Source of the DNA: Thalia democratica
Lineage: Eukaryota
Length of the DNA stretch: 64,000 bases
Reading direction: 5' to 3'
Assembly (NCBI GenBank): GCA_965202585.1
Contig: OZ241827.1
Coordinates: forward strand, 45,198,001-45,262,000
The notes beneath the pieces were generated by a model, which saw only the letters and a list, made by a program, of their open reading frames with translations, was not told where the DNA came from and ran no database searches. The translations under genes and the position numbers were made by a program. Positions 20,239 to 51,035 of the stretch are shown here, piece by piece. Position 1 is the stretch's first letter. Each line of letters opens with the position of its first letter.

Positions 20239-23200
20239 TTAACTATCAAATCCGTAAGACTTTAAACTTGGATGATTTTCACAAGCCATAAGTAGCTTTA
20301 GTAGAGAGCATTCGTCTTCTACTTTTGTATTTAACAAAGTTATGCTTTCGATAGATTTATGACTTCTTATTTCTTCTATAATTAAGTTGACGTCAGCTTT
20401 TGTTAAAATGTTTAAAGAAGTTGTTTCTTTACTCCCTAAAATATTGCAAGTGATATAAAATTAAGTTTGTATGTTTGAGTACAATATATTTGTTATTTAA
20501 AGTTTTTTTTGATAATTTTTTTTATACTATATTGATATTTTAACATATCTAAAACTATTTGAGCATATATAAAACTAGTTAGTATAAAATTTGAACAACT
20601 TAATTATGAAAAAGTTGATAACGTTTAAAGTATAAATGAAATTTACTGCATGCTAAAGAAATGCTTAACAAATTTAACTGATTAATATTTGTTTTGTGTT
20701 TGTTTTATGTTAAAAAAAACTAAATATTTATTAATTAATCTATTTCTTATTTGTTTTGGTAAGTAGGGTTAGAGGTAAGTGTTTAGTTTTATGGTTTTAG
20801 ACAAAATAAGTTAGAAATAAGGGTTTAAATGTTAGTACTGAACCATTATATTTTTAGTGTTTTTCGTTTTCCTAATTACAACGTAATGTAATAAAAGTAC
20901 TACTGCAGCCGACCCTTAACAATGTCATTTGAAGCGTACTTTAAAAAACATACAAAAATTTTAAAACATGATAGAACTTAAGATAACATAGAATAACAAA
21001 TTGTAAGTGGCAAACGTTTTTTGATGTTTTTTTAGTTAAAATAAGCTACAAAAAACTCATTCTATTACATATTTTAAAAATAATTTAAACATTTATACTT
21101 AAAGGTTTTCAGTTCATGACTATAAACATGTTTAGATTAACAAAGTTACTGTAGTAAAAGAAGAATTAAGCAAAAGAAAAGTTAAGGGTTGTGTAAAATT
21201 GCTATTTATTATTAAAAACAATATAAAGATTGTTCGTAATTCTATTACTTAATTTTAATATAAATGTTATTCTTAGTTATTATTTATCTAATTTTTTGTA
21301 GTTAGAAGTTTTTGATTGAAAAACTTAGTAAACTACGTAAAAAATAAATTAAATATACACATTCGTTTTAATACAAGCGCTTTCTGTGATTGCTAGGTAA
21401 TTACGGGTGTACGACTATTAAAACTCGGACAATTCTAATTCTTTAAAAAAATTTGAAGGACCACAACTCAAAAAGTAATCTATATTTGAAAATACAACGT
21501 ATGTAGGTCTTATTAGTATCTACAAGCCATTTTTAATTTTTTGAAAAACTTTAAATATTTTCTTAGATGTGGCTAAAATAGTTTTTTTTTAATTAATTTA
21601 TTTCTATACGCTTAAATTGAAAATGAAAAATCCACTTTACTCTTTATCAAATACGTTAGAACAATGAAGAGTTCTAAAAAAGTTATTTTCCTAAAGAGAC
21701 TAATTAATTTTGCAGAAACAGCATTGCTGATTTTTGAAACACTTTTATTCTATTATTAGCAGTTCTAAAAAAAGTGAGAAAAAACTATTAAATGGTCTAG
21801 CTTTATTTATCTTAAAATCCATACCTGAAAGGTCTACCACCTTGATGGAGCTAAAGTTTTGGGCAAACCCTGAAAATAAACATAAACTAGTTTATAAGTT
21901 AAAATATATTAAAACAAACCTAAAAACTAAATTTTAAGTGAATCTGAATAGTACATTAAAGTAATTAAGCATATTTTTAGTCAAGACAAATAACTATATA
22001 TGTGAATCTGATAAATCTTTCAAAAACAATTAAATAAAGTATAAAAATCACTTAATGCGTTTAAATACTTCGGTTATTATATATATTCATAAAAACTATT
22101 TACAATACAAATTTATTTCTAATTAAATTTTCCTAAAAGTTTAAGTATTAAAAGAAGTTTAGCGTATTAATAAAAAGCGATACCTTTAAAAAACCTCGAT
22201 AATTTGTTAGTGAACTTTCCTCCAGAAAAATCTAGATTGGTAATGTGTCTGCTTACTGCCAAGTGATGCTTTGCTGCAAGTAGTGAGCATTCTCCCATGC
22301 CTGTGTTGGCGAGATTTATATCTTCGAGCTGAGGTAGATCTTTTAAAGTTCGCATTAAAAAGCAAACAAGCTCATCTCCGATATAGTTGTTGCTCAGATT
22401 TAGCTTTTTTAAACTCTTCAACTGTCTTAAAGCTTTTATAAAATGTTTGATAGGTGCCAGGTCGAAAAATAAGTTTGAACTCAAGTCAATTTCTTGCAAC
22501 GTTGAGCTGATTGATTTGCTTGACAGCAATTTGCTCATTAGCAATAGTTTTTCAGATGATAAGCAGGCTCTTTGAAGCACTAGGGACTAAAAAATAAAGT
22601 TTTAGATGCTTAAGAAATACTTTGAAAACGACATACAAATAGTTGCTTCATTTTGTTTTTACTTCGAAATTGTTTATATACAAAACTATATAAGCTAATC
22701 AGCTGTAGTTGAAATAAATCTAAACCATATTAATATTTTTTACTTAATGTAATGTAAGTTATATTTTAAATATGTTATAAATATAGTCTTTAGTATTTTT
22801 CGCTTCATAGATTCTACTTAAACAACTTTCCAATAATTTATTGTTATTTATTCATATCAATACGAATACGTAAAACTTAGAAAAATCAGTTACAACCCAG
22901 TTTGTTTATATTATGACATCAAAATAAACAAGAAATATTTAACTTTTTATCTTTGTGGTATTTTCAAGAAAATAGGGAAATAGTTTCTGTTTATGAACAG
23001 TTTGCAATAATTAGGGACATATTTTTTATAGTATTTGTACACTGCTGTAAAACCAGAACATCTTAGAGAACACAATTAGATATAAATCTAGCATTTAGCT
23101 CAGAAAGCTATAATACTTAGCTAAGAAGTATACTACTAAAAGTAAGATTGTCAAGAAAACAACTATAGGTCTATACCTTATTTAAGGAGAACAAATATAA

Positions 23201-26200
23201 ATTTTAATTCTGTAAAAGTTTATTTGGTGAACTAAGTTTCGCTCAAAGAGTTCCAGTGCTTAAAAAATACAAAAAATTTTCTATTTAAATATAAATTTAT
23301 TTAATGAAAAATTTATAATCTAAGTACACCATTTTCATTAATTATTACTTAAAAGAAAATTTAAATTTTATTTACTACAATATGTATCAACCAGAATGGT
23401 ATATTTTCTAAGGTAAAACTTTTTGTTACTTTTACTAATTAAATTTTTGTAATTTGAAGCTATCTGATCTAGCAGTTTTATCTTCTGCTAGATATATATA
23501 TATATATTGAATATATTGAAAAGCTCCTTCACTTTGCAAAGACTTAAACCTAATTTACAAAACAATATTAAAAGCTTAGCACAAATTATTTTTAATTATT
23601 TGCTATTAAAACATTAAATTTATTGAATAAATAAAAATGGTAAGAACCATTAAAAAAATCAGTCACAGTCTTATAAATTATAAAGTTTATATTTATTTAA
23701 AAGCATACAGGAAGATCATTATTAATGATACTAAACAAAATGTTTTATTACAATAAATTTAAAAATTAAAATGGGATGAAGGTAGTCTTCCTCTTTTGAT
23801 TTTAAAGACCGAACAGGATTGAATTTTAGATAAATATAAATAAAAATGGTAAGAACCATTAAAAAAATCAGTCACAGTCTTATACAACCACTTTGAAGAG
23901 ATCTTTCGTTTATTAAAAAACAAACATTTTCAATTCGGTAGAAAACAAAAAAATATACTAGCAATTAGAGAAAGTAAATTAAATATTTTTAGCAAAATTT
24001 AAAATAAAACTAAAAACTACCATATTATTATAATACTGAATTTCATACTTTTACTTTAAAATTAATGGAACACTTATATTTGAGATTAGTCAGTAAAGTT
24101 TGATATTATTTTTCAATTTGAGAAACTGAGAAAAAGACACTTTGGAAAATTATTTTTGTTTACTGTAACTAAGAAAAACTATTTCTATAAACAACAAACA
24201 ATTAAAAAAAATCCCCTAGTATTTTACTTGATAAAAAATTTTTTTTGATGACATTTTCAATTTTTTATTATTAAAACTATTCCTTAAAAACACTGTTTAA
24301 ATTAATTTTTGCCTTAGTTTTTTTAATCCACCATTGTTCTGTGTAGTCTAAATTAGTTCTTATAGGGCTTTCTAAAAACTGGACTGTGTAGGCATTTTCT
24401 ATCTTTTCTGGTATATTGTTTTTGTGAAATTTATTATAATGTATAATTAGAGCAAATTGGTCTTTTATTTCATGGTTTAGTTCAGTTTTATTAATAAGTT
24501 AATTTTAAGGAATAGTTTTAATAATAAAAAATTGAAAACGTCATCAAAAGTTTTTAGTTTTATTTTAAATTTTGCTAAAAATATTTAATTTACTTTCTCT
24601 AGTTGCTAGTATATTTTTTTGTTTTCTACAGAATTGAAAATGTTTGTTTTTTAATAAACGAAAGATCTCTTCAAAGTGGTTGTATAAGACTGTGACTGAT
24701 TTTTTTAATGGTTCTTACCATTTTTATTTATATTTATCTAAAATTCAATCCTGTCCGGTCTTTAAAATCAAAAGAGGAAGACTACCTTCATCCCATTTTA
24801 ATTTTTAAATTTATTGTAATAAAACATTTTGTTTAGTATCATTAATAATGATCTTCCTGTATGCTTTTAAATAAATATAAACTTTTTAAAACTTCGGAAA
24901 TGTTTCTTATTTGGGTCATATTTATAAAAATAAAACAAGATTTGTAAACATCTATGCTTTATACTTAATAATAAAGCTAGTTAAAATAAAATAAACTATT
25001 TGAAAAAAATCCTAAAGTGTATTTTTAGATTAACAAAGTTATCTTTGTTTAATTTTGTCAGTAAACATAAAATTAAAAGTACTTGCAGAGTTTAATATTT
25101 TTTTTCTTTAATTTTACAACCTGTATGTAATGAAATGAGTTAATTTTTTTCATCACCCCTTCAAAAGAGTCGTTCATGTTAACACAACACAAGCTTAATT
25201 CACTTATCGACCAGCACCATTCAATATTCGATACAAAATTTTTCAAATCATTTTGATTTAGCCGAAGTTTTTTCAAGTTTAAATTGCGTAGTGGAATTAA
25301 ATTGTCGTGTTTACTATTAAACACTGATCGAAACAATGTTATAGTACAAAAGTCAATTTCTAGCATATCTAGATAGATAAAATGCTCAGTACAAACTTTC
25401 ACTAAAGAAGAATAACTGTTTATATTAAATGTTTCATTACTCTCAAGCATCATAGTAAATGATCGCAAGTGAATGTCTTCTTTAGAGTTTTGTTTTATTG
25501 TTTCGACGAATCTTTCAACATAAAACTGCTTTGCTTTCTTAATTTCTTTGAGATCAAGAACCAGTAAAAAGTTAAAGTTGCAAACTAACTTTGCTATAAG
25601 CTCAAGCTTACTTGCGCAAAGGCCATGTATTTCTATACTTGAAATCCATGGTCTTAGTGTGAATATTCGAGGAAAACCCTTGCAACTTAAAAATGGTTTC
25701 CATGTTTTAGATATATACAGCATGGCGTTTTGTGTTCTATAAGAAACATTATTGAAATCTTTAAACTGTAATACTTTTTGATCTTTTCTGTCACATACGG
25801 TTTTAAAATTACTTCCTTCAAAATTTTCAAGCAAAGTAGAAATAATTAACGGATCACATTTGCTCTCATAAACGAGTTCCAAACACAATTGCTGGGCAAC
25901 TTGTTTAAGATGTTCTGTTAAAATTAATTTTTTTTTAAATTGTCATCTAGATTATTTTCTAAACATAACTCTTACCATTTTCAGTCTTTTTTATTATACA
26001 AACAGTATAATCTATTACAACTTTGTGATTGTGTTTACTAGCGAAAATAAAAAAGTATTTAGACTGTATCACATCTTCTAACGTCGTATAGTGTTTCTTT
26101 AGAAAAACTTTTTTAATCTTCTCATCAAATGTGGAAAAAATTCTGTTTTTTTTATTGCATAACTAACAATATTAATTTTTACAGATTTAAAAATAAGTTG

Positions 26201-29200
26201 TCTTACTGGGACGATATAAAATCTTCAAAAAGAGCAAAATTAATTTTGAAGAAATTATTTTCTGAATTTGCAAAACCAATAGAGTATAGCTTTGAGAAAA
26301 TTGGCATGTTTTCATGTTTTTCATAAAGTTCACCATACCTTTTTTGTACAGTATTTGTGAGTAAACTTGTCTTAAATTTATCAGTTAATTCAGCTACAGC
26401 CAGCTCACACCTGTTAAATAGAAGTTAGGTCGGTACAAAACTTTTTTATCCTAACAAAATATTCTAATTTTAGTGTTGTAAATTTTAGCTTTCCTGATTA
26501 ATCTTGATATCTACTAAACTACTACTTTAAAGATTTTTTTTAACTTTTAGTTTATTAAAAGCTTTAATACCTTTTGCAAGCAGCACTGAAAGCTTCAAAA
26601 AGGCTCAAGTCCAGGTTTGATCCACTTTCACGTTGTTCATCAATGTAAGCAATCAACAAAAAAGTCAAGCTCGGTTGTTGGTAGTTCATTTTAAAAATAT
26701 CTGGGCTCAACAGCTTTAAATCGTTTAAACTGCTCGTACACTTTGATTGAAAATTTTTCGCACTCAAAAGTGCATCAACAGGACTAAATCCAGATAAGAT
26801 GAAACTCGACCAGTATTTAGATTTGAACAAGTAAAAATTGTTTTTGATGCACTCTGTAATCGATTCTTTAACTAGTCTCTTTGATTCAGTAAAAACATTT
26901 GTTTTAATAGAAACTATGACAGTTGATTCTGGCCACTTTTGTTTATTTATTACATGTTTTATTTCATCATTGAAATTCGTAGTACAATTAAAATTGTCGA
27001 ATAAAAACAAGCAATTTTTTCCATTGTTTAGGCTTAGAGTATTATCAAGTTCTTTTGTAAGAAGTCTTGTTTTGTCATCTAAGCTAGAAATTTGTTCTAA
27101 AAATAAAACTTCCAGTAAAAATGTTAAAAACATTAAAAAAAAGTTTATAACATAAAAAAAAAAAAAATAACCACATGCCGGCTTGTAAAGACTTTTAATA
27201 GTTTTTTATCCAAAAACATATTTTATATTTTTCAAAATCGTAAAAAAAGTACTTAAGCTCATGTTTATGCGAAGAAATAAATAAATGAATACAAATATAT
27301 ACAAAATTCATTAAACAACCAACAACTTTCTTAGATTAAGTCACAGAGAACTACTTAAGCTTTATAAACCTGAGTCAATAATGTAATCACAAATGTTGTT
27401 GAAGTTCTTTTTGTTGCCAATATTTTGAGAGTTTAAATAAAAAACATGCTTAAATTTCTTTAAACTATCAATCTCATTGCAAGCCCACAAGTAGCAAACG
27501 TGCTGCAAAAAAGTTGTTTTCCCAAATGACGCTTGTGCACTGTTAAAATAAAATCATTAATCACTAAACACAAAAATATTCCTTAAAAGTAATCGAGCTA
27601 AACTAACCTTATAACTATGTTAGTTTCAATAAAAATGTCTTTCCACATCACTAAACTTTTAAGTTGATGATCTTTTAAACTTTTACTGCTTAAATATTCT
27701 ATATTTTCAGTTGAACTTGAATTTTCGACTTTAACTAGATTAAAACGAAGTTCACGCATTGGAATCTCAATTACAGGTTTAAAAAGTTTAAAACTTATCG
27801 TCTTGTAATCTTTTAAGTATCTTCTTTTTAAAGTTGATTGAATTTTTTCACTTAAGGTTCCTGTAGACTTTATCATTTTATAAAAACTACCACAAAGTCG
27901 TTTAAAAAGTATAAATCTGTTGTTAACAACTGATTTGTAGTATACATATAGTAATTAGAGTCTTAAAAACTTTCAACATTTGTTTGTATTAATAAATATG
28001 TTTGTATTTCTCTTAAAACAAAAAAATACTTTAACAACTAGTTATAGAACTACTTTTATCCATGGGCTGACTTAACAGCTTTTTAATATTCTCATCTAGT
28101 TCTTTTTCTTCTTGTGCTTTTTTCAATAAACTGTTACTGTAAACTTCTTTACTAAAATTTTCTGTCCAAACTAAGGAACTTTGTTGGTCTAAATATCAAA
28201 AATATTGATCGTGAGAAATATTTTGTAGTTTAGTGGCTAATTACGTATAACTTACATTTACAAATTTACCTTGATTGTATTTATTAATACATTTGAGTTC
28301 TATCTGTAATTTTTCTTTATGTTCATTTTTTGTAAAAGATTCTAAATTTATTTCTGAGTAACTTTGATTGATTTGACTGTTTTTTGGTGAGTTACAAAAT
28401 GATTGAACAATCGATTTCATCTGCCCAAAATTACAATACAGATCCTTAAGTTCTATCTCGGTAGGTAACTCCTACGAGTTTAAAGATTGTCGTACAATTA
28501 TAAAAATTTATGAAATTTATTTATAACACTTTTTAAGACAATAAACTTACTTGAAAACAGATACAATATGTTTTCGGTTACATACATTGCTTAATTAAAA
28601 GTATAGTTTTAAACTAATAACCTTTTTAGCGAACAAAGAATCTTTTTCTCTAATGTAAATTTTGTTTCGTTCTTCTAAAGAGCTCGTGTGATGTTTCATC
28701 ACTTTTAAAATTCTACTGCTTTCCATGCTGTTATGGTGCAGAGACAGAACGTCATAATTCCAGGATCTCATCGAATTTTTGTAACAGTTGAGTCTATCTA
28801 ACACTTGACATGTTTTTCTCCAGTAGTTGTCAAAAGTTTCTTGAGTCATTGTCTTTCCATTTACAAAACCTACAGAGTTTTAGAATTTAGTAACAAAAGT
28901 GTAAAGTATTAATAGCGTAAGTTTTAACATGATTTTATTTACTATTTTTATAGCTTAGAAAGCAATATCTACAAACTAGCTACTAGATAATATTATACTT
29001 GTGTCACATTGAAAAGATAACTGTAATGATTAGCATAAAACTTAATTTTAAAACTAAATGAATTTAGTCTTTATTTTAGTTATATCTTATTAATTGCAGT
29101 AAGTTTTAAATTTTATTCAGCTAAGTTTTAAAAAATTCAACGAACATTTTAAGGATTTTTTTATGTTTACAAGTCGGATGATGTCAAAGAGAGAAGATTT

Positions 29201-30003: not shown

Positions 30004-31980
30004 AGCAAGTAAATAGAGGCTTTTAAAAGCACGCTAAAAGTTCAGTTCTTGACTGTCAGCTCAACCTAGCATAACAACAATGGAAAAGATTTTGCTTTTG
30101 TTTGCCTTGTTACGTCATAATACTTGTTAGCATGGCTGTATGTTGTATCATAGCAGACGAAAATAAAGTTTAATTGTAAAACATAACGCAAATAAAAATA
30201 CTTTTTTAAACACTTTTTTGAACCATTCTCATTTTTTTTTGGTTTAAATTTACTCTTAAAGTATTTAGTTTTAAATACAATTTACTTAACTTTTTAAAGA
30301 CCTTTTTACAGTTATTATAATTTAGTAATGAAAGATATGTTAAATATCATACAAATTTTGACACTTTTTAAGTCAAAATGAAAAAATTATTATTAGTTTA
30401 AGAACGTAATATGGATAATGTTAAGTTGATGGATAAGCACCAGTTCTTGAAGCCTTGTTTTTAAAATAATTTTGTTTTCTTAAAATACGCTTATTAATAA
30501 AACGAGCTTAAAATTTAATCATCCAAGCTTCAAGTTTGGCGTTTTAGTATACGGTCAAAGTTTGCAAATACTTAAAATTTTAAATTTGTAAAAAAAAAAA
30601 TCAAATTGTACAGCTCTTGTAAATTTTTCATCATTCATAACAATTAAGTAATATACATTTGTATAAAAGAAATAAGTCAAAACCAGTTTTTAAATTTTAC
30701 ATGTTTTTAAAATGTTTATTTGTTTGAATTAAGTTTAGCATATAAAGTTTGTATAACAATAATTTTATAAACAAAATGTTATTTTGAATAGTTAAATTGC
30801 TAATAAAATTCTTTTTACAAGTTTCTATTTTCATAGACTCTTTGTGACGCGATAAGAAAATAATTTTTTCGAAAAGCAGTTACATGTCAGGATTTATTAT
30901 ATTAATCATTTCTTAATACTTAATCTCCTGAATAATATTTTCACTTGAAAAGTACTATTCCTTCAGTACTAAAGAAACTAAAAGGAGTTTATAGTGTTTT
31001 TGTGAACACTTTTGCTAAACTGATACCTTCAGCGGAAATCAGCGCATATCAAAACGAATAATAAAATAAATAACAAGTAAAACGATAAAATGCGCAGTTT
31101 TTGTATTATAAAAAACAATATTTATAGACATACAATAAAAAAATTTATGGCATTGTTAAATTATAATAAGATATGACAAAACAAACATTTTCAAAGAGTA
31201 TGCGAGTTTGTAAATAAAATTTAATTTTAATCTACAACAGTCCAGTGTAAAGTAAAAACTAATTTATCCATTCAAAACTAGTCGGACAATTTTTAAGGCT
31301 TTTTTAGTGTTTATTTTTGTTATTGGAAACCATATCTGTGGTCTTAAAAAAAAAGCCAAATAGTTAGTTTTCTTTTTACTTTAAAATTGAGCTTATGTAT
31401 TAAATAAATACTACTTCATCAGACATACTAAAATAATGAATTTAGTTTTTATGTTGTTGTATAGAATAACAATAAATTTAAGAATTACTACATTTTTTAG
31501 AGTTATATCCAAAATAATCAAAGTAAGCAACGTATCAAAGTTTGTGTACACATCTATTAATGTTTAACGTGTTATAAAGCTCATATTGATAATTACTTAA
31601 TTTCTGCATAGGTCATCTGAAAGGAATAAGTTGCTTTTTTGTTACAATAAAACCTACAATTTCCTTGCTTTTACAACAGTATTACTAGTAGTATTACTAT
31701 TAGTATTACTGATTTTTATTGTTATTGTTTTTTAATTATTGATATATTTTAACTATTTATAAATTTTTTGTGTCGAAGTAAAAGTTATTAGAAAAAACTT
31801 AATATAAAACAAGCAAAGCAAAAAGTATGTTTGTTGTTTGATAAAACTAATTTTTAACACATTTGGGAAAAAAGCCAAAGTTGATTTGAAACTAGATAAA
31901 AACAGACTAAAAGTATAATTTAAAGACTTTTTCAACCTTAATGTTTCTAATTAAAATTAATTTGAAAAGTTAGTTAAAGT

Positions 31981-34900
31981 ATGTTACTAAATTCTATTTT
32001 TATTGTTTCCCTACTGTTGAAGTTTACACATGGGCACTTTACTTTTGAAACAAAACTTGGAAATTTAGGTAGTTTAATTTTTTAATTATTTGATTTTATA
32101 ATTAAATAGTAAAGTTTTCTACCAAAACCTTGTCTACCAAACTTGAATAATAAACGAACTAAAATTTATTTTATTATTACTTTTATTATATTTTACGTAC
32201 ATAAATATTTTTATATAGTTTAAGTGTTATAGTCCTGGACAAGAAATTAAACTGTATCCATGGATTATGACACGATAACAAAAAAGTTTTTTTCGTACAT
32301 CAGGTACTTATACCAAACTTTTTGAGTTCTTTTTTTTTCGTTCAACATCCTATTATGAATTAAAATATTTAATGTTTAAAAAAGTCTTAGAAAAATCAAT
32401 AGTATTTTGATAACACACTTAAATTTTGAAATAGTAAAAACTTAATATAAAAAATACTACAGCTCTAAAATTAATTAAATTAAAAAAAAACTACCCTCGT
32501 ATTATACATTTGATAAAATGTATGTCCTGGACAAGACGTTAAAATTTATCCAAGTGGTGTGCGACTCGATAACCGAAAGGTTTTTTCGTGCACCAAGTCC
32601 TAGGACCTAATATTTTGAGCGTTTTTATTTTTGTTGTTTAATAAACAATGATAAGACTATTACGTTTTTTATATTTTTTTGTAAGTGAAGATTTTAATTA
32701 AATTTTCAAAGCAGCAAGTAAGTAAAATTTAATAGATGTTGTACGGTTTACAAACAAAAACTATATATAACATTCATACTATAAAAAAAATCTAAGCTTT
32801 GGCTAAGTTTTTTTTTTCGAGTATTTTAGTTTCAGCATTTAAGTACGCAAAATGCTTAGTCAAGAAATATTTGGTTCTATAGTTATTACTCAAACACTTT
32901 AATCGGTTATTATGTTTTTGTTACTTTTTTATACGTTTAACGAACTTAGTTGCTTTAAAAAATTAAATAATCACTTTCCATAAGAATATCTTTGTTATAA
33001 ACAGATGTCTACTTAAATGGAAGAAAGGTTCTGGCTCATACCAAAACCGAGCCTGCTTTAGAAATTGGTTCTGGAAAATCTAGGTAAGTAATCTATCTGT
33101 AAAGTTTGTAAATAGTCATACTAAATAAAAGTTATAAAATATTAATAAAGTAATTGTTTTTAAAAAATCATCCCATTTAGTTACCACATGAATCATGGTA
33201 ATTTTGATGTAATAGAAGACCTTCATGCTAAAGAGACGCTTGATAACTTTATAATTGAAGAGAAAAACCCTGAAGATTCGAATAAATCTCCATTTGTAGT
33301 TAAATTTAAATCCAAAACCGACAAAAAATATGTTAGTTCAGACTTATGTTAAACAAACGGTAATGAAATTTAATTTAATAAACACGTAAATACAAGGTTC
33401 GTATTTTGTTTGATGAATGCAAAAAAGGAGACGAAGTTTGTGAAAAATACACGAGAAGAAGCAGCTTAGATGGAGTTCATTATTTTAAGGTAACAGAAGT
33501 TGCAGATAAATCTGTGAACAGATTGTGGCTTAAACTGTTTGCTGAAGAAGAAGAGCACGTATATGGAGGTTGGCTTTTTATTTTGGACTTCGAAGAAAAA
33601 AAGAAGTTGTCATAACTCTTTTAACGTCAAGCTGTTTTTTTTTATAAACTTTAGTCAGATTTTGTTCGTAGCTTTATTTATTTCTAAATTACTAGTTTTT
33701 ATTTTAAAATAAAAGTAAAGTATTCCTATACATACTTTTTAATAAACACTAAAAGTTTTAAATAACATTTTATAACAGAGTGCTGCTAAAGTTTTGTTTC
33801 TTAGTCAAAAAATGCTGTTTGCACAAACTTGTTTTTGAACCATTGCATTTTTTGTTGCATACATTACATAGAATAAAATTTAAGGAGGAGAACAATACAG
33901 CCATTTCTCCCTGAAAGGTCACAATTATCCAATTTGGGCCAGAGAACAAGGTGTCGGGAGAAATCACTCAACTTTTCTTACAAAAATGGCAGGTTTTAAA
34001 TTAGCTAATGAACGGCTTTTATTAATAAGGTGACAAAAATTAAATAACTTAATGAAAATTTGACTTGAAACGTTTAATAAATTATTTCAAGTTTTTAAAT
34101 AATATTTCTGTTAACTTTTTAGTTACTTAATAGATATCCACAGTGGAGCGGGCGGGGATTACCATACTACTTACTGGCCTCAATCTACATTTGTTACAGA
34201 CCGACTGGTTTACTACCATTTAGACTACAACCACTACCATGTTCTTGATTTTAAGTTGGTTGTTGTTGTTGCGCTTAGACGTAAAACAAAGCATATGGAT
34301 GAAAGTTTTGTATTTTCATATGAAAATAATTAAAGAAAAAAAATTTTTAAATATTTTATTCAACCTTTGCTCAACCTGATAACTTTGAGTTTTACATAAG
34401 AAATATTAATAATTTATACATTTTCTAAGTGTCTTTTGAAGGTCACCAAATTATCATGAAATTGAGCTTTGGGAAGACGTATCAGCAGCAACCATGTTCA
34501 TGGAGACAGCTCCAACTTGGACTCTAGTACTTAAAAATCTTTCTTCGTTTTTTGGTAGACAGCCATTACCACCAAAATGGTTGTACAATGGAGCTGTACT
34601 CGGACTACAAGGTGGTACGGAAAAGGTAAAACTATTTTATGTTATCTTTAAAAAAGTTTTAAAAACTTAAACTAAATATATTAACAAGTTTTTTATTTAG
34701 ATAAAACACTTTTTACCAATGCACTTTGCATGTCGTATGAAAACTTAATTTATATTTCTTTTAATAAGGTTGTTTATGCGTTTTTATTATCAAAGCAACA
34801 TTCACATATGTTTTTTTTAAATATATAAAGCATTTAAGTAGTAAAAATAGTTATTCTTTCATACATTTTGTATTTTTATGTAGTTTTATTTTAAAGTTTG

Positions 34901-37900
34901 TGTTATTATGTAACGTATAAAACTTTTTATTTGACATTATTTAGAAATTTCCACTACTAGTTTACAAGTATTTTTGTTTTAAATAGTACATGTTATTAAT
35001 ATTTTAATAAGTCATTAAACAAGATTATTAGTTATTTTTTATATATGTGAAAATTTCTACTAATTGTTTCTTAATAAATTGAAATTACTTGACACTAAAT
35101 TCATCAATAATCTTAAATATCGGTCGTATTTAAAAAGTAAGAAATTTTAAAATAACTCATACTATATTACTAGGTTTGTTGGCTAGTTTATTGTTTTAAA
35201 ACTTCTTAAATCACTTTAATTAATTTGTATAAATTATATTGTATTTATTTGTCTTAACTAAAAAAGTTTGCTCGATTTACTAAAATGTAAAAGCTTATTT
35301 AAATAATAAATGATAATGTTCAAATTATGTATTTCATTTATTACCAGGTTTCGGTGGCAAATCAACCTGGTAGTAAATAAATCATTTAATTTGCGCATTA
35401 TTGTATAAATTATACTAAAGAAACAGATATAGTATAAAAAACATAGTAATATAAAAACATCAGCAAAAAATATTTATCTGATTTGATTTTAAATTAAAAC
35501 TTATAAGAGTTTGTCATATGTATCAAAAATATTTTTTTTACAAAAGTGGTTTTTAACAAATATAAGTTTATTATCAAAGGTTACTTGTGAAACTTTTTAA
35601 AGATCATTTATTATTCATAAGAAATTGAAGATGAATTAATTGTCAAATACATAGCTACCTTAAAACATATTTTTACCAACTAAGATGAAAATCAATAACT
35701 TTTTGTAATCGGGCAGTTTTAAATTTTCTAAATTGACCCTTTTATTGGAATATCATTTAGTTTGTCATTAAGAATAAAATTACTAACAGATATAATTATT
35801 TTCAATTTAAGTTTTTATTTTTAAAACGAACAGGTAAATTGTTAAAAATAATTTGAAAATTTATTAATTTTTTTATTTATAACATACTAATAAAAAATGT
35901 AATTTTACTTGTTTTATTTTTTTACGAAGTGTTTAAAAAATTCTAAACCTTAGTAATAAGTACAAATTACTTAAACACAAACATAAAATATTTACAAAAA
36001 TACATTTTAGAATAATATTTTATTCATGCACTTTATTTAATTTTTAAACACATTTTAGAATACATCTTTTACTACGGATTTCCTTGAATTTCGATCTACC
36101 AAAGCAGTGTATACAACAAAAAAAGGCTTAAGATAGTTATTGTAAAACTTATGCATATTATATGAAAAAGTTTACAAATTGTTCTTTCTGTTTTGCTGCA
36201 ACTTTTTTTTTTGCTTTACTAACTTTAACAACAGCGCTTTAGAAATAAATTACTATTTAGGTAGTTCAAACGTATAAAAACCTAAAAAATGAAGGCGTAG
36301 AAGTTAGCGCTATTTGGATTCAGGATTGGTCTGGAAACTACTTCACTGAGCTTGGTTCTCGTGTTTACTGGAATTGGAGGTGGAATAAAAACTTCTACCC
36401 TAATTTAGACAAAGTTATAAAGGTCTTTTATACTACTAGTTTATTTTTTTGTTTAGTTTAATTCAAAAAATTATATTTTTATTTTTATTTTTCAAAAATA
36501 TTTATTATAGTATAATTTTTACAGTACTTATTTAACTATACATAAAAGTCAGTAATTAATAAATAATCTTTACAGACACAACACTTGTTCTTTTAAAACA
36601 GGACTTTGACGAAAATGAAAATGTGAAGTTTTTGTCTTACATAAACCCACATGTAATAGTTGGTAGCGAAATGTACAATGAAGGAGAAAAACATGGATAC
36701 TTTATTAAAAACAAGCAAGGTTTATTTAAGAAAATTATGTTAAGTAAAGCGTTTCAAAGCAAGCTATTAACTACAACTTTATACAAAGATATGCAAGTAA
36801 AAACTTTAAGTTCAAATCATTAAAGTCCTCATTTCTTTTATATTTCTAGCTAAATATGTTTCTATAATTTACGAGTAACTTGACAAAAAACAATAGGTGT
36901 TTTTTAAATGCGCTCATATAAAAAGTTTTTTTGTTTATTTTGTTTTACGTAAACTTTGTATAAAAACGTGTGTTTATTGACTTTAGGAAGTCCACTAATT
37001 ATCGATTTTGAAATGGACTGCGCAACCGTTGACCTTACAAACCCCGATGCCTACGAGTGGTATAAAACAATACTAAAAGTTTAAAATTTATTTACTTTAT
37101 CATAGTCTTGATACAACATTTACCACATGTTCTAGGAAATGCTGCAATTAGGATTTGGTGGCTGGATGGCAGATTTTGGTGGTGAATACTTGACTGTTGA
37201 TGACGCTGTTTACTTTAGCGGAGAAGACCCCAGATTGATGCACAACAAATATTCAGAAATGTGGGCTAAGTTGAACAGAGAAGCGTTAGAAGAAGAGGGA
37301 AAAGTTGAAGACACGTTTCTGTTTTTCAGATCAGGTTAGATAGTATAGATTTTTGTTTTTAACAAGTGTTTTTTAAGTATTTTCATTTATGTAAAAAGTT
37401 ACTTATTGCGTATCAAATCACTTTTTTTCTTTATTTATTTTTGTATTTAGCAAATAGAAAAAAAAAATTTTTTACATCAGCAATCCCTTACTTTAAAACC
37501 ATTGTTTTTAAAATATATTACATTTGAGGTATAAAAGCAGTTGAAATAAGTACATACAATCAAAAACAAATGATTTAACTAAAGACTTTAAGCTTTTTTT
37601 TTAATAAACTTTTTAACAAAATATATAAAAGGTTTATATAAATATACGAATATACTTTATACATCATTGACACTAAACTGTATCGTAGTACCATCAACAG
37701 CCTAATGATACTTGTATGATAGCTAAAAATTTTTATCTATTTTTACTTTATAATATATTAGTATTAAAATTCATCGTATTCATGTTTATGTGCAGGATAC
37801 GGAAGATCACCTGGATATGCAACTACTGCATGGGCTGGAGACCAGAATGTAGATTTTTCATACAGTGATGGACTTGCGTCAACCATACCTGCTGCCTTGT

Positions 37901-40900
37901 CACTTGGAATGTCTGGTACGCATTAAATATTGAATGATTTCATTGGTAACAAAAATAACTAAGCTACTTATAAAATTTTAAAAACTTTTTGCTTGCATTT
38001 AAAAAAGTTTTACTTTTATAAAAACTCAAAGCAAATATATAAACTTACAAACATTTTAAATTAAAATTATAGTGTCTTAATTTTTTTGTTTTTAAAATTC
38101 AAACACGTATTAATAATTTATATTACCATTTTTGAAAAATGAGTTACAAAATCTAAAACTTTACCTCTTTGTCCTTTAATTTTTTCATCTTATAATAGTT
38201 GTATGTTAACTTTATCTTCCCAAGAAGATAACCTTCAAGGGAAAAACTTAAATAGAAAATGTTTATACTTTAAGTATCAGTCTTTTATTTTATACTAAAC
38301 GAAGTAAAATAAATTTTAATTTTTAGCCCTTTATAATCAATATTTAGTGAGGTATATTGAACACCAAACAACCTCTAAATAAAAAACTAAGTACCCAAAT
38401 ACAAGATATCTGGAGTAACATAAGTAATGGTTTCTATTAACAAAAACGGAGTGAAAATTGTACAATAAAAAAGAGCACATAAACTTATCGGAAATACTAG
38501 AAAATGTTAAATCAAAGAACAAGTTGACTTTTATTAATGCTTTAGTTTTAAAAAAGTGCGGTAAATTTCTAACCAAAGTCTATAGAAAGCCAACTTCCAC
38601 GAGCCATTACCTTAACTTACAGTTTTTCGCTGCTAGCGAAGAAAATTTGGTGTAGTTCAAACCTCGTACCACAGAATACAAAAAAATGCTCATCATAAAT
38701 TTGATTGATAAATTAGATAAAATTTCAGTGAGTAAAATAATGAAGTCACAGTCTAATCAATCAAATTGAGTTAAACATTGTGGTTCTTAAAATACCCAGT
38801 GTTACTGCAGTACCGTTCATTAGAGTTTTTTTTTAGTTAAAAGAAATACTGATTAGAAAGTATTTTAAATTTAACATTATGATTTTTTTACTACCACTTC
38901 TAGGTACATACTTAATTAAACGGGAAAAGACTCAATAACATCAAAAGAAAATAAAAGTGTTTACAAATACTAATGATACTGAAGTAGTAAATATCAAACC
39001 TAATGGCTTTTAAACTAAGTATAAAGGAACATGTCTCTAGATAAATTTAGTTGTATTTTGGTGTAGTACAAAACAAAATCAACTCAACAGTAAGAAATGC
39101 TATGAAAAGATCCTAAACAGCGGAAAATTTAATTAGCAGCCCTACTTTTTCAAAACAGTTTGAAATTTTAAGGTTTAAAGTTTTGAGGAATTGTTTAAAC
39201 TGTTTTGATTTAATCAGACTAAACTAATTTTAAATAACCACCTAATATGTAATATGTTTAATAAATAGGTTGGATATACGGTTTCAGTATTTACTTAGGG
39301 CTTTTGTGTTATTTTAAATTGGTTAAATGACAATTCAAATTCCGAAAAATAAAACCTAAAAAAAAAATTAAGGGGCCACAACTTAAAAAGTAGAATCATT
39401 AAAAAAAAATAAAAAATATGTATGTTTTTCTTATTAATATCTACCAGCCATTTTTTCTTTTTGTAAAATATTAAATATTTTTTAAGATATCAAAAAAAAA
39501 TATATATATATACATTAAAACTTATTTTAAAAATATATATTACTTTTTTAGTTGTGGCCCTTTAAATTTTTTTTGAATTTGAATTGTCGGAAATTGTCGT
39601 GCACTCTTTTAAATTGTATTTTGTTAAAAACTTTTCTATGTTTAAAGATGCAATTTAAACGATTAGTAAGGAAAAAATAAAACTAAATGTTTTGATTTTA
39701 TTAGGATAAAATGAAAGATATTTTGTAAATTTATATAATTATAAGTTTTATGTATATTAATGTAACAACCTGTACAATCATTAAATGTTAACTCTAATAA
39801 AACAGTTATATGGTTGAAACTTTTTTACATGAAAATTTAACGTTGTTTTTGTGTTGAACTTCTTTATTGTTTATGTTTTTAAACTCTATTCAAACAAGGT
39901 ATGGGAATAAGTCATTCAGACATTGGGGGATATGTTTCAGCGATGTGCATGGTCCGTAATCAAGAACTACTGCTAAGATGGGCGGAAATGGCTGTTTTTA
40001 CTCCGATTATGAGAACTCATGAGGGGAACCGACCAACAATCAATTGGCAGGTTTTAAAATATTTTTTGTTTATACGTGCAACATCATGCAAAAATATTTT
40101 AATTGTCATTGGTATCAGGCCAAATTTAATAATACATTAATAAAAAGTTATAAGCTTAGTCTAAGTTATTTTTTACTTTTGTAGCCATTTTTTTCGAATA
40201 TTTTTATAAACAAAAAAAAAAATTCTTAATCTTAAATTATTTTCCTATCATCATATTTATTTATTCTAATAGTACTGAGTAGTCTTATTGCTACAAAAGC
40301 AATCGATTTTATTGTATGCCATTTAACCAGGTTTATACAAGCAAGCAGACATCTACATCCTTTGCTCGTCTCACAAAAATTTACACTTTGCTCACCCCGT
40401 ACCACTCGTTTATCGCTGAAATAAACAGCCAGCAAGGTATACCAGCGCAAAGACCAATTTTTATCGAATATCCCGACGATAATGTGGCATACGACATCAA
40501 GTTTCAATATATGTACGGTCCAGGTGAGGTTGCTTAAAAAGTTCTAATATAAAAGAGTGTAATAAAAAATGTTTAAGCTTTTTTAATTAGTGAATAGCAT
40601 TAAAGCGTTTTTAGTTTTTTGCTTTGTTTGAAATTTGTTTAAGTTTACATTGAGTGGCTTGCAAATCTACAAGTTCGATGCGTCTTAGACAATTTTTTTT
40701 AATTCCTTTTACTTCAGTATTTTAAAGTAAGTCTTCAATTATTTACTTGAAAACATAATTTTTTAATAAAATTATAAAGTATATAAAGTGTTGCTTATTA
40801 TCAAAAATTAATACTACAGCTTTGTAGATATGACAATGAAATATAGACTAAATGTTTTTAAGAAGTCAGCATTTTTTAAAAGTTTTTATAATATACTACT

Positions 40901-41213
40901 CTCAAACATAAACTATTTAACTTCTTTATTCTACTTACTTTTTTATTACGTAGACTTGCTAGTTGCACCGGTTTTACTCGAAGACTGCTCGTATTGGACA
41001 GTTTACCTTCCAGCAGGGACTTGGTATTATCTTTGGAATGATACCGAAATCGTTGTTGAGCCTTTCGGTGAGAGCAAAGATTACAAAGGTTCAAACGTTG
41101 TAATTGACGTGAAAGATTTAGGATATCCTCCAGTGTTTTATAAAGCTGACTCAAAATGGATTGACTTGTTTGAAGAAATTAAGCAAAACTGTGAGTTGGT
41201 GTTTTTATCATAA
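31981..41213 (+). CDS. GH31 glycoside hydrolase, YihQ/sulfoquinovosidase-like, with N-terminal signal peptide; 15 exons (31981-32068, 33005-33083, 33181-33331, 33397-33568, 33885-33992, 34134-34254, 34442-34625, 36261-36422, 36602-36719, 36987-37078, 37136-37334, 37796-37915, 39899-40050, 40331-40523, 40954-41213)
   Basis: Uninterrupted spliced ORF collinear with E. coli YihQ as recalled: PALEIGSG..HGNF, EQGVGRN, GGDY.TTYWPQ.TF, GRQPLPPKWLYNGAVLGLQGGTE, WIQDWSG...GSRVYWNW, SYINP, VDLTNPDAYEW, GWMADFGGEY (nucleophile), WAGDQNVD (acid/base), HSDIGGY, RTHEGNRP, LLVAPV, PPVFYKADSKW. Confidence 0.93.
32232..32830 (+). repeat. Two tandemly placed copies (about 32232-32340 and 32521-32830) of the unclassified repeat also at 19021, in GH31 intron 1
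   Basis: GTCCTGGACAAGA(A/C).TTAAA...ATCCA...GATAAC..AAAG.TTTTTTCGT.CA.CA shared among all three copies. Confidence 0.7.
38340..39140 (+). pseudogene. Decayed Penelope-like (RT/GIY-YIG) retroelement fragment in GH31 intron 12
   Basis: Translation KLTFINALVLKKCGKFLTKVYRKPTSTSHYLN resembles the LPFLD..V....F.T.VYRKPT.T..YL RT thumb motif of Penelope-like elements; frameshifts and stops follow. Confidence 0.65.
39329..39607. mobile_element. Foldback-like MITE relic in GH31 intron 12
   Basis: Nested inverted repeats GACAATTCAAATTC / GAATTTGAATTGTC and TTAA-GGGGCCACAACTTAAAAAGTA / TACTTTTTTAGTTGTGGCCCT-TTAA; right end GTCGTGCACTC resembles the 21404 end. Confidence 0.65.
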
Positions 41214-47157: not shown

Positions 47158-48502
47158 TTATTTCAAGTTGTGATGAACAAGTAAAAGATTTTCACCAATT
47201 GTTGAAAGCAATCGATTTCGCTTTTGTCCGAACAAGTTACCAGCTTTTGAAAATAACCTTTCAGTATAAACAGAAGATGGTGGTACCGAAAGATACCTTC
47301 TTGCAAACCTGGGAAGATGTGTGTATTTTATCTTGTTTGAGTTCCACCAAGACAAGACTTCAGCTTCTTTAAATTCTTCAGCAGATAAATTTTCTTTAGC
47401 AAAAAAAATAGTTTCTGTCTCAATCTCTTGATCAACTGAATCTTGTTGCTCACTTTCGTAAGTGTTTGCACTTGTTTCCAATTTAAATGTAGAATAGAAC
47501 GACAAAAAAATTTGGAACATCATTTTTAGGTAGTTAAGCTTGAGGTTTATTAGGCGGTACTAGAGGAACTTGACCACTTTGGTCAGTTTCACGACAACTA
47601 TGATTTTCTACTTCTTATTTCAGTAGCCTTACAACCTTTTGCTTGAAGTTAGCAGGGAAAACGTCAAGTCGATACCCGGGATCAACAGCTTTTGTGAGTA
47701 AAAACAAGTCGTTATCATAAAGGTTTTTTCGTGTGCTGTCATTAGTAGTATAAAACCTTCTTTCGAAAGCTTCTTTTATATTTTCTGGTGAACTATAAGC
47801 TTTATGATTAAAAAACTTTTTTAGTACTGCTGCATGCGGGATTACACTTGGAAGCAATGCGTTGTTTTTACTACACTGCTGCGTTACTATGTAAAAAGGT
47901 TCAAGTAGTTCATTAAGGAGGCTAACAAGTTTCCATTCATCAGCTGTAAGAAAATTTTTGGGTTTAAATTTGTTGTTAGCCATATAGTTCTGAACACTTG
48001 TTTTAAATTTTTTCTAGTCTTTTTAGCATAAGGTAAGTTGGGATCCACCTTGTTTCAACATCTTGCATAAGTAGCAAGGCTTTTTGTATTGACACTGATG
48101 AACTTAAAGTGACCTGGTTTTTTTTTTAGTTTTTTGCATGCTGTAAAAGAATGATTAAATTGGCCAACAGTTTGACGGTCCTTGGCTATTAACACACTTA
48201 TGTTATTTTCTGACAACAGTGAATCTTTAATTATCAGTTGAAGCGTGTGAATGAAACAGGGTGCTGAAGAGGATTCTAACAACAACAGTCTTCATGTTAA
48301 ATGCATTGTCGCGCAGAAAAACGTTAATGCGATTCATATTAATACCTAAACTTCCCTATTTCCCGAAATACCCCAAAGTTTTTCAAAACTAATTAGATCC
48401 TGATCCGACCAAATCTCACCTAGGATCCGGCTGGATCTGGAATTTTTTTTTTAATTTAGAACCGTATCCATGCAAAAAATGGTCGGATGCGGTAGATCAC
48501 TA
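47158..48502 (-). mobile_element. hAT (Ac/ZBED1-4-like) transposon, internally deleted, with frameshifted transposase
   Basis: Terminus TAGTGATCTACCGCATCCG with GGATCCGG subterminal repeats; fragments FLRDNA, APCFIHTLQL (CxxH), DEWKLVSLLNELLEPF, AVDPGYR, SWW...RYLSVPPSSVYTERLFSKAG lie in different frames. Other end not securely located. Confidence 0.85.
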
Positions 48503-50183: not shown

Positions 50184-51035
50184 TTATAACCGTTTTCTAG
50201 CTTTTTTTATCTGAAAATTTTTACTAATCTGGTTTTGTTTAACACTTCGGTTTCTATTGTATCTTTTCAACCCAGCTTTGTATGCAAGGTAATCTCTGAA
50301 ACTGTTTTTTGGTTTGTTCAAAGAAGAATTTTTTTTACCTACAACAAAAAATGGCTTCGACGAAACTTTATTTTGAATGCCTGTACTTGTCCGGTTTTCT
50401 TTTGTAGGTCTTTTGCTTCTCAGTCTTTTCAAACCAGCTTTGTAGTTTGTAAAGCTGTTTTTTGGTTTTTTCGAAAAAGTTGTTTTTTGACTAATTACAA
50501 AGAAACATTTTGACAAAACTTCTTCTTTTTTTAAAGCACTGATGTTTGCTAATTCAGTTGTACCCGTTTTCAAGTGAGTTGAATTTATTTTCTTTTTTAT
50601 TTTTCTCGCGCAAAGCTTATGCACTTCTGTCACCTCTTTCACACTTCTTATTCTTCCTTCTTTTATTTCAGACCACGGATCAGAAACATCAACTATTAAA
50701 ACCAAATTTTCATCATCAGCAGATCCAATTCTACTAGGAGCTTTATTTATGCTTTTTTGGACGTTTTCTTTGGCTGAGTTTGCTTGAATACTAGATGGAG
50801 TAGATACTTTCCACTCACATCGTCTTTTCATCAGATCTTCTTCCTTCGCACAGTCAAGTGTCGGACACCTAGTAAACTTCAAAATTAGCTTTTCTCGTTC
50901 AGGTTTAACTTCGTTCATAAGAATTTCGATCTTTTTGTTGTCTCTTTTACAAAATCTGGAAGTAACCAGCCTCTCATCAGTACATTTTAGCATTTTACCC
51001 AAAAACACCATAGAACTATTACCAGTAATCTTCAT
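50184..51035 (-). CDS. Uncharacterised intronless Lys/Arg-rich protein, 283 aa
   Basis: 852-bp ORF in DNA where random ORFs rarely exceed about 250 bp; A-preceded ATG; internal duplicated motif KPKNSF..Y(LAY)KAGLKR. No domain recognised. Confidence 0.6.
   Translation of the reverse strand: MKITGNSSMVFLGKMLKCTDERLVTSRFCKRDNKKIEILMNEVKPEREKLILKFTRCPTLDCAKEEDLMKRRCEWKVSTPSSIQANSAKENVQKSINKAPSRIGSADDENLVLIVDVSDPWSEIKEGRIRSVKEVTEVHKLCARKIKKKINSTHLKTGTTELANISALKKEEVLSKCFFVISQKTTFSKKPKNSFTNYKAGLKRLRSKRPTKENRTSTGIQNKVSSKPFFVVGKKNSSLNKPKNSFRDYLAYKAGLKRYNRNRSVKQNQISKNFQIKKARKRL

What the first reader, a model, noticed from the sequence alone, without database searches (positions are those of the whole stretch)
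31981..41213. Intron-rich animal gene with the complete sulfoquinovosidase (YihQ) active-site signature
Seen: a 15-exon stop-free gene whose product follows E. coli YihQ from N- to C-terminus. It has Q in WIQDW, R 13 residues later and W 16 residues later (GSRVYW), Y in HSDIGGY, nucleophile D in MADF and acid/base D in WAGDQ. Established: in GH31 SQases (EcYihQ Q288/R301/W304/Y508) this QRWY set binds the sulfonate and separates them from alpha-glucosidases; SQases release sulfoquinovose from the algal and plant sulfolipid SQDG, chemistry characterised in bacteria. Eukaryotic homologues have been noted in sequence surveys, but I know of no characterised animal enzyme. Inference: this animal may cleave sulfolipid from algal food, prey gut contents or photosymbionts, opening a host-side entry into sulfoglycolysis, possibly feeding SQ to its microbiome. 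An old bacteria-to-animal transfer is possible.
Basis: partly seen in the sequence, partly recalled or inferred. Interest (0 to 1): 0.85.

Follow-up and report, generated by a model that had tools for sequence, protein, structure and literature searches.

The report
Tunicate gene for sulfolipid-cutting enzyme
A pelagic tunicate carries an intact, selection-maintained 15-exon gene for a secreted relative of the bacterial enzyme YihQ, which releases the sulfosugar from algal sulfolipid; such "animal sulfoquinovosidases" were already catalogued from sequence in 2026, so this is a new member of a known, still untested, group.

Summary
A 15-exon, all GT-AG gene (31981-41213, + strand) encodes a 732-aa GH31 protein. 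It aligns end to end with E. coli YihQ at 44% identity. It keeps all eight functional residues: Q296, Q322, R335, W338, D438, D507, Y543 and H572.

- **Real and constrained.** Against a close relative found in marine metagenomes, exons are 92% identical without indels and introns 78% with many indels. dN/dS is 0.08 and every splice site is kept.
- **An animal gene, not a recent bacterial import.** In a careful ML tree it falls inside an all-animal clade (support 98/99). Three introns share position and phase with the amphioxus gene, and one also with a sea urchin gene.
- **Probably secreted.** Exon 1 adds a signal-peptide-like N-terminus that YihQ lacks.

The interpretation, digestion of algal sulfolipid, is reasonable but not new. 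A 2026 preprint (Uchida et al.) describes "animal SQases" in 65 species, including chordates, and RefSeq already uses the name "sulfoquinovosidase-like". I found no text linking the enzyme to tunicates and no report of a biochemical test of an animal GH31 enzyme.

Verdict: new member of a known kind, moderate interest. This scan had not noted the gene before.

The parts
31981..32068 (+). Exon 1: start codon and signal-peptide-like N-terminus (MLLNSIFIVSLLLKFTHG|HF), absent from EcYihQ.
   Evidence: 12-residue hydrophobic core (KD11 up to 2.37) and a -3/-1 site T-H-G after residue 18.
33005..33083 (+). Exon 2: N-terminal beta-sandwich (EIGSGKS aligns with YihQ WIGSGIA).
   Evidence: donor TAG|GTAAGT.
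33181..33331 (+). Exon 3. It ends at a phase-0 intron shared with the amphioxus and sea urchin genes.
33397..33568 (+). Exon 4. It holds a lineage-specific insertion of about 14-20 aa with two Cys (C114, C121) just after the shared intron.
   Evidence: the L002 orthologue begins its exon at the same place (IVLQFD against RILFD).
33885..33992 (+). Exon 5 (GGEQYSHF...REQGVGRN).
34134..34254 (+). Exon 6 (GAGGDYHTTYWPQ).
34442..34625 (+). Exon 7. It contains Q296 (codon 34608-34610), equivalent to EcYihQ Q262.
36261..36422 (+). Exon 8: WIQDW...GSRVYWNW, with Q322 (36321-36323), R335 (36360-36362) and W338 (36369-36371).
36602..36719 (+). Exon 9 (TIM barrel).
36987..37078 (+). Exon 10 (TIM barrel, VDLTNPDAYEWYK).
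37136..37334 (+). Exon 11: nucleophile D438 (37172-37174) in WMADF, followed by a clade-specific extra Gly (ADFGGEY).
37796..37915 (+). Exon 12: acid/base D507 (37840-37842) in WAGDQ.
39899..40050 (+). Exon 13: Y543 (39931-39933) in HSDIGGY and H572 (40018-40020) in RTHEGN. It ends at a phase-0 intron shared with amphioxus.
40331..40523 (+). Exon 14: end of the barrel and start of the GH31 C-terminal domain.
40954..41213 (+). Exon 15: GH31 C-terminal beta-domain (PF21365) and stop TAA at 41211-41213. AATAAA-like signals lie within about 80 nt downstream.

Best explanation
This is the tunicate orthologue of the metazoan 'animal sulfoquinovosidase', a GH31 retaining alpha-glycosidase of the YihQ family.

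**Shown**
- The gene is intact and intron-rich, and it is under strong purifying selection.
- Its product has the GH31 N-terminal, TIM-barrel and C-terminal domains.
- It keeps the two catalytic Asp residues (D438 nucleophile, D507 acid/base).
- It keeps the full Q-RWY set (Q322, R335, W338, Y543), which in EcYihQ binds the sugar and its sulfonate, plus Q296 and H572.
- It groups with the other animal proteins and shares intron positions with amphioxus and sea urchin genes. It was therefore inherited within animals and not recently taken from bacteria.

**Inferred**
- The N-terminal hydrophobic exon acts as a signal peptide and there is no membrane anchor. The enzyme is therefore soluble in the gut lumen or in a lysosomal compartment.
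- There it hydrolyses the alpha-sulfoquinovosyl bond of SQDG or, more likely, its deacylated forms (SQMG, SQGro) from filtered phytoplankton. This releases sulfoquinovose plus glycerol or lipid.
- No downstream sulfoglycolysis gene lies in the window, and none was found in a giant clam genome by Uchida et al. The free SQ is therefore probably left to gut or faecal-pellet bacteria.
For: - Gene model: 15 exons, all GT-AG, 732 aa, no internal stop.
- Identity to EcYihQ is 44.4% end to end.
- Top solved-structure matches are SQases (5AED/5AEE, 5OHS, 8R56, 6PNR), at E = 1e-12 to 1e-15 per exon.
- All 8 functional residues are kept, whereas YicI differs at 5 of them.
- NF007746, the YihQ equivalog, is the best NCBIfam model for 11 exon pieces. 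Pfam PF01055 and PF21365 also match.
- Careful ML tree: the animal clade including the window has support 98/99, and the window pairs with the L002 relative at 100/100.
- Introns 3, 4 and 13 have the same alignment column and phase as three of the seven introns of the Branchiostoma gene. Intron 3 also matches Lytechinus. About 0.05 coincidences are expected by chance (my estimate).
- Against close relative L008, exons 8-15 are 91.7% identical with 0 indels. Introns are 77.9% identical with many indels. dN = 0.030, dS = 0.367, dN/dS = 0.083, and all splice sites are kept.
- Exon GC is 38.9% against 22.1% for introns.
- N-terminus is signal-peptide-like, there is no TM segment, and there are 4 N-glycosylation sequons.
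- Literature: the Q/E-RWY motif defines sulfonate recognition (PMC12780224). Animal SQases mostly carry signal peptides and are expressed in digestive organs (10.64898/2026.02.11.705467).
Against: - I found no report of an assay of an animal GH31 SQase, so substrate and activity are inferred from residues alone.
- No transcript evidence was obtained. Two exon-junction probes found nothing in JGI metagenome contigs, which is uninformative.
- The summed NF007746 score over exon pieces, about 516 bits, is below the 553-bit equivalog cut-off.
- A one-residue Gly insertion sits two positions after the nucleophile (ADFGGEY). It is found only in this clade and its effect is unknown.
- The signal peptide was judged by hydropathy and the -3/-1 rule only.
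- The tunicate pair sits outside the other animals on a long branch instead of next to amphioxus.
Confidence: 0.75

Rival explanations
1. The protein is a working GH31 glycosidase, but its natural substrate is not a sulfoquinovoside. It could be another alpha-glucoside with an anionic 6-substituent, or an endogenous tunicate glycan. The animal clade would then have shifted function while keeping the ancestral pocket.
For: No assay of an animal member was found. Some animal members have F in place of Y508 (Lytechinus, Orchesella), which shows that the pocket drifts within the clade. This clade has a Gly insertion next to the nucleophile. No SQ catabolic genes are nearby.
Against: The window protein keeps all four Q-RWY residues as well as Q262 and H537 equivalents. 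These positions lie in exons under strong purifying selection. According to the literature, the motif is what separates SQases from glucosidases.
Confidence: 0.12
2. The gene is a decaying or silent relic: a pseudogene, or a copy that is never expressed.
For: No transcript was found with the tools available. The stop codon position differs by 6 codons from the close relative L008.
Against: The 732-codon frame across 15 exons is intact. dN/dS is 0.083, there are zero indels in 1296 coding nt against about 870 gap columns in the aligned introns, and all splice sites are kept in L008. The same exon boundaries appear in the more distant L002/L003 orthologue.
Confidence: 0.03
3. The gene is a recent horizontal transfer from bacteria into this tunicate lineage, or bacterial contamination of the assembly.
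For: Identity to EcYihQ (44%) is slightly higher than to the springtail, limpet or urchin proteins (40-41%). Bdelloid rotifer SQases are thought to be such transfers.
Against: There are 14 spliceosomal introns. Exon and intron composition is typical of the host. Three intron positions are shared with amphioxus. The protein sits inside the animal clade at 98/99 support. A eukaryotic signal peptide exon is present. Flanking genes are animal genes: fibrinogen-related, LRR and hAT.
Confidence: 0.01

Closest known systems
E. coli YihQ (sulfoquinovosidase, GH31; PDB 5AED/5AEE) and Agrobacterium SmoI (5OHS)
   Same: The window protein has the same three-domain GH31 layout and aligns over the whole length at 44% identity. 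The nucleophile, the acid/base and the Q-RWY sulfonate/4-OH recognition residues are identical, as are Q262 and H537.
   Different: The window gene is eukaryotic and has 14 introns. It carries an N-terminal signal-peptide-like extension, an insertion of about 14-20 aa with two Cys in the N-domain, and one extra Gly after the nucleophile (ADFGGEY). It is not embedded in a sulfoglycolysis operon, whereas yihQ sits among yihO-V.
'Animal SQase' clade (Uchida et al. 2026 preprint; RefSeq 'sulfoquinovosidase-like' of Branchiostoma, hemichordates, echinoderms, molluscs, brachiopods, bryozoans and springtails)
   Same: It belongs to the same clade (98/99 support) and keeps the conserved key residues. 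It has a signal-peptide-type N-terminus. It shares intron positions with the Branchiostoma and Lytechinus genes.
   Different: It comes from a tunicate lineage that the preprint text does not name. It has many more introns: 14, against 7 in amphioxus and 3 in Lytechinus. It sits on a long branch. It has no C-terminal TM or GPI-type tail, unlike Branchiostoma P0224, whose C-terminus is hydrophobic. It carries the clade-specific Gly insertion.
E. coli YicI (GH31 alpha-xylosidase), as a non-SQase GH31 comparator
   Same: It has the same GH31 fold and the same two catalytic Asp residues.
   Different: YicI lacks the Q, R and Y of the SQase set (gap, D and F at those positions) and has S at the Q262 position. 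Window exons match it about 10 orders of magnitude less well than YihQ.

Membership tests
GH31 sulfoquinovosidase (YihQ/SmoI type) | GH31 architecture: N-terminal beta-sandwich, (beta/alpha)8 barrel (PF01055) and C-terminal beta-domain (PF21365). | tested here: met
   The model aligns end to end with EcYihQ. Pfam PF01055 hits exon 13 and PF21365 hits exons 14-15.
GH31 sulfoquinovosidase (YihQ/SmoI type) | Catalytic nucleophile Asp (EcYihQ D405) and general acid/base Asp (D472). | tested here: met
   D438 in WMADF and D507 in WAGDQ.
GH31 sulfoquinovosidase (YihQ/SmoI type) | Q/E-RWY motif (Q288, R301, W304, Y508), which recognises the sulfonate and the 4-OH. | tested here: met
   Q322, R335, W338 and Y543, with spacing Q+13 = R and Q+16 = W. 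The motif definition is taken from PMC12780224 and the Uchida preprint.
GH31 sulfoquinovosidase (YihQ/SmoI type) | Scores above the curated cut-off of the YihQ equivalog HMM (NCBIfam NF007746, 553 bits). | tested here: inconclusive
   Only exon pieces could be scanned. NF007746 is the best model for 11 pieces, and their scores sum to about 516 bits. The model was built for bacterial proteins.
GH31 sulfoquinovosidase (YihQ/SmoI type) | Phylogenetic placement with verified SQases and not with other GH31 enzymes. | tested here: met
   It groups with EcYihQ and YihQ-like bacterial proteins, apart from the YicI outgroup. Only one non-SQase outgroup was available.
GH31 sulfoquinovosidase (YihQ/SmoI type) | Hydrolysis of alpha-sulfoquinovosides (pNP-SQ, SQGro, SQDG) with retention. 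| not testable with these tools
   This needs a recombinant enzyme assay.
GH31 sulfoquinovosidase (YihQ/SmoI type) | Neighbourhood of SQ transport and catabolism genes (typical of bacterial members, not strictly defining). | tested here: not met
   The 64-kb window holds a fibrinogen-related gene, an LRR gene, a hAT remnant and other ORFs without Pfam matches. Operon-style clustering is not expected in an animal genome.
Metazoan 'animal SQase' clade | Monophyly with other animal SQase-like proteins. | tested here: met
   UFBoot/SH-aLRT support is 98/99 for 18 animal sequences plus the window and the L002 relative.
Metazoan 'animal SQase' clade | Gene structure shared with other animals (homologous introns). 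| tested here: met
   Three introns share column and phase with Branchiostoma floridae, and one with Lytechinus.
Metazoan 'animal SQase' clade | N-terminal signal peptide (most members). | tested here: met
   Heuristic only: a hydrophobic core at residues 2-13 and a T-H-G|H site after residue 18. SignalP was not available.
Metazoan 'animal SQase' clade | Expression in digestive tissue. | not testable with these tools
   No transcript data for this species could be reached. The junction probes found nothing.

The most novel reading that the evidence does not exclude
Pelagic tunicates, which are major grazers of phytoplankton, secrete a working sulfoquinovosidase into the gut. The animal itself, and not only bacteria, would then carry out the first committed step of SQDG breakdown in the open ocean and export free sulfoquinovose to gut and faecal-pellet microbes. 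This would be a host-side entry point into the marine organosulfur cycle in the closest invertebrate relatives of vertebrates. The lineage-specific Gly insertion beside the nucleophile might tune substrate range or pH optimum.
Probability: 0.5. Interest if true: 0.55.

Novelty: new member of a known kind. Interest (0 to 1): 0.4.

Why it matters
[quoted passage not shown] The 2026 preprint on animal SQases already raised the idea that invertebrates do this too.

What this locus adds:
- It extends the family to a pelagic tunicate, a group with very large grazing and carbon-export fluxes.
- It provides a clean, complete gene model.
- It gives direct evidence of purifying selection.
- Its intron positions are evidence that the gene was already in the common ancestor of tunicates, amphioxus and sea urchins. 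By implication it was later lost in vertebrates.

It is a good candidate for the first biochemical test of an animal SQase, because it keeps the complete Q-RWY set whereas some animal members carry F at the Tyr position.

Tried and rejected
- **Model B for the exon 3/4 junction** (donor 33335, acceptor 33476). This removes the 25-aa insert. I rejected it because donor 33331 is phase 0 at exactly the amphioxus and urchin intron position. The L002 orthologue also starts its exon 4 at the equivalent of 33397.
- **A further downstream phase-0 acceptor** (before VTEV). Rejected because the preceding residues are coding in L002.
- **Fragment-plus-full-length alignment (A1).** I built it to search the large protein database for a full-length protein of this species. 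MAFFT scattered the exon pieces, so I did not use it.
- **Exon-junction probes in JGI metagenome contigs.** Two probes gave no hits, which is uninformative.
- **Taxon of the related contigs** (L002/L003, L013, P0007). Only sample accessions were returned, so I call them relatives and not named tunicates.
- **Supplement search of the preprint** for tunicate genera returned nothing. I cannot tell whether its figures include tunicates.
- **Exact mapping of the Patella gene structure** failed, probably because of a tiny first exon.
Full report
**Observation**

The region 31981-41213 on the + strand holds stop-free segments whose translations carry GH31 motifs. I used a profile of 42 full-length relatives to score every frame-compatible GT...AG pair. 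This gave a 15-exon model with exons at:
- 31981-32068
- 33005-33083
- 33181-33331
- 33397-33568
- 33885-33992
- 34134-34254
- 34442-34625
- 36261-36422
- 36602-36719
- 36987-37078
- 37136-37334
- 37796-37915
- 39899-40050
- 40331-40523
- 40954-41213

The CDS is 2199 nt and encodes 732 aa. It has one terminal stop and all introns are GT-AG.

Exons have 38.9% GC and introns 22.1%, in a window of 25.6% GC. The gene is single-copy in the window.

**What the protein is**

- Single exons hit the solved sulfoquinovosidases best. EcYihQ 5AED/5AEE, Agrobacterium 5OHS, 8R56 and 6PNR score E = 1e-12 to 1e-15. The alpha-xylosidase YicI scores only about 1e-3.
- I took EcYihQ from the MG1655 record, where it lies in the yihO-yihV sulfoglycolysis cluster. 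The model aligns with it from end to end at 44.4% identity over 671 positions.
- All eight residues used in the literature to define function are kept:

| EcYihQ | Window | Role, per the literature |
|---|---|---|
| Q262 | Q296 | partner position of Q288 (the Q262K/Q288E pairing in the Agrobacterium enzyme) |
| Q288 | Q322 | hydroxyl recognition (Q of Q-RWY) |
| R301 | R335 | sulfonate recognition |
| W304 | W338 | sulfonate recognition |
| D405 | D438 | catalytic nucleophile |
| D472 | D507 | acid/base |
| Y508 | Y543 | sulfonate recognition |
| H537 | H572 | substrate binding |

- YicI differs at five of these eight positions.
- The Q/E-RWY definition is taken from PMC12780224 and from the Uchida preprint.
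- NCBIfam's YihQ equivalog model NF007746 is the best model for 11 exon pieces. The summed score of about 516 bits is below the 553-bit cut-off for whole proteins, so that test is inconclusive.
- Pfam finds PF01055 and PF21365.

**Is it a live gene?**

Marine-metagenome contigs carry the same gene from the same or very close species. L010-L012 are 89-92% identical over the aligned stretches, introns included. L008 and L009 are a slightly more distant relative.

Against L008, over exons 8-15 (1296 nt):
- Exons are 91.7% identical with no indel.
- The intervening introns are 77.9% identical, with several hundred gap columns.
- dN = 0.030, dS = 0.367 and dN/dS = 0.083.
- Every acceptor and donor is kept.

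A more distant relative, L002/L003 (about 60% amino-acid identity, from an unidentified ENA assembly), has the same exon boundaries for exons 4-15 and the same functional residues. I found no transcript. Two junction-spanning probes found nothing in JGI metagenome contigs, which says little.

**Origin**

The large protein database shows that RefSeq already names "sulfoquinovosidase(-like)" proteins in echinoderms, hemichordates, amphioxus, molluscs, a bryozoan and a springtail.

A careful ML tree covered 39 proteins under LG+C20 PMSF, with YicI as outgroup. I first removed ten long-branch unnamed sequences, which are listed.
- The window and L002 pair together at 100/100.
- That pair falls inside a clade of all 18 other animal sequences at 98/99, apart from the bacterial YihQ-like proteins. 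The quick tree with all 49 rows agrees.
- The pair is sister to the remaining animals and not to amphioxus. This is what one expects of fast-evolving tunicate sequences on a long branch.

Gene structure gives independent support.
- Exact mapping of the Branchiostoma floridae and Lytechinus pictus proteins onto their loci gave 7 and 3 introns.
- Window introns 3, 4 and 13 fall at the same alignment column and phase as three amphioxus introns.
- Intron 3 also matches a Lytechinus intron.
- With 14 and 7 introns over roughly 2100 positions, about 0.05 coincidences are expected by chance. This is my own estimate and ignores proto-splice-site preferences.

The gene was therefore already split by introns in a common ancestor of these deuterostomes. 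The tunicate lineage later gained many more introns. A bacterial origin of the whole animal clade remains possible but is old and cannot be tested here.

**Differences from the bacterial enzyme**

- Exon 1 encodes MLLNSIFIVSLLLKFTHG|HF, with a 12-residue hydrophobic core and a -3/-1 cleavage motif. EcYihQ has nothing like it.
- No other segment reaches transmembrane hydropathy.
- There are four N-X-S/T sequons and six Cys.
- Exon 4 starts with an insertion that contains two Cys.
- One extra Gly follows the nucleophile (ADFGGEY). Among 280 collected relatives this occurs only in nine single-exon fragments, which also end at the same exon boundary. It therefore marks this clade.

**Context**

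- Earlier notes of this scan describe the genome as a very AT-rich pelagic, net-feeding tunicate, possibly a salp. I did not test this.
- Neighbouring sequences are ordinary animal ones: a fibrinogen-related exon, an LRR gene and a hAT transposase remnant.
- No SQ-catabolic gene is in the window.

**Mechanism proposed**

Shown: an intact, constrained gene for a YihQ-type GH31 enzyme with a complete SQ-binding pocket.

Inferred: the enzyme enters the secretory pathway and acts in the gut lumen or lysosomes. There it cleaves sulfoquinovosyl glycerolipids from ingested phytoplankton through the usual two-step retaining mechanism (D438 as nucleophile, D507 as acid/base). R335, W338 and Y543 would hold the sulfonate. 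The released SQ is probably passed to microbes.

**Comparison with what is known**

Uchida et al. (bioRxiv 10.64898/2026.02.11.705467) reported SQase homologues in 65 animal species. They noted conserved key residues, signal peptides and digestive-organ expression, and they found no downstream genes in a giant clam. Their text names Chordata and Branchiostoma but no tunicate, and the supplements held as text name none either. No paper in the library links the enzyme with tunicates. The functional validation of eukaryotic enzymes that I found concerns algal SqgA (PMC12780224), not an animal GH31 enzyme.

**Verdict**

This is a new, well-documented member of a known and still uncharacterised group. 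Interest is moderate (0.4).

Noticed in passing
window 17531-17827 (+): An ORF segment matches the C-terminal part of the fibrinogen C-terminal globular domain (PF00147, E = 5e-13). It is probably one exon of a fibrinogen-related (FReD) gene upstream of the SQase gene.
   Followed up: partly
window 22167-27876 (-): A run of long minus-strand ORFs lies here (137, 271, 189 and 92 aa). The first has leucine-rich repeats (LRR_1/4/8), and the others have no Pfam match. This may be a large LRR-containing, NLR-like gene.
   Followed up: partly
window 47158-47983 (-): A hAT-family transposase remnant. Its C-terminal dimerisation domain matches PF05699 at E = 9e-18, with a further 122-aa ORF just upstream on the same strand.
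   Followed up: partly
window 62810-63349 (-) and 50184-51035 (-): Two long ORFs have no Pfam hit at E <= 0.01. By eye the 179-aa one looks like part of a retroelement polyprotein. The 283-aa one is lysine-rich with an internal repeat.
   Followed up: no
window 5126-5268: The only run of N in the window (143 bases).
   Followed up: no
L008 about 5400-5600 (aligned to window 41190-41213): In the close relative the stop codon lies six codons earlier (…EIKRNC*). The last six residues of the window protein (ELVFLS) are therefore not conserved.
   Followed up: yes
P0262 in the tree: A Paramecium sonneborni YihQ-like protein groups with a Clostridium sequence and not with the animals (support 82/83). 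This suggests a separate acquisition of an SQase-like gene in ciliates.
   Followed up: no
P0013, P0083: Two eukaryote-looking GH31 relatives differ around the WxQDW motif (for example 'FWLQVDD'). They may represent a different, possibly plant-type, YihQ-like subgroup without the SQase signature.
   Followed up: no
window 31955-31980: An AG (…tttgaaaag) lies 11 nt upstream of the start codon. In a tunicate this could be a spliced-leader trans-splice acceptor. I did not test this.
   Followed up: no
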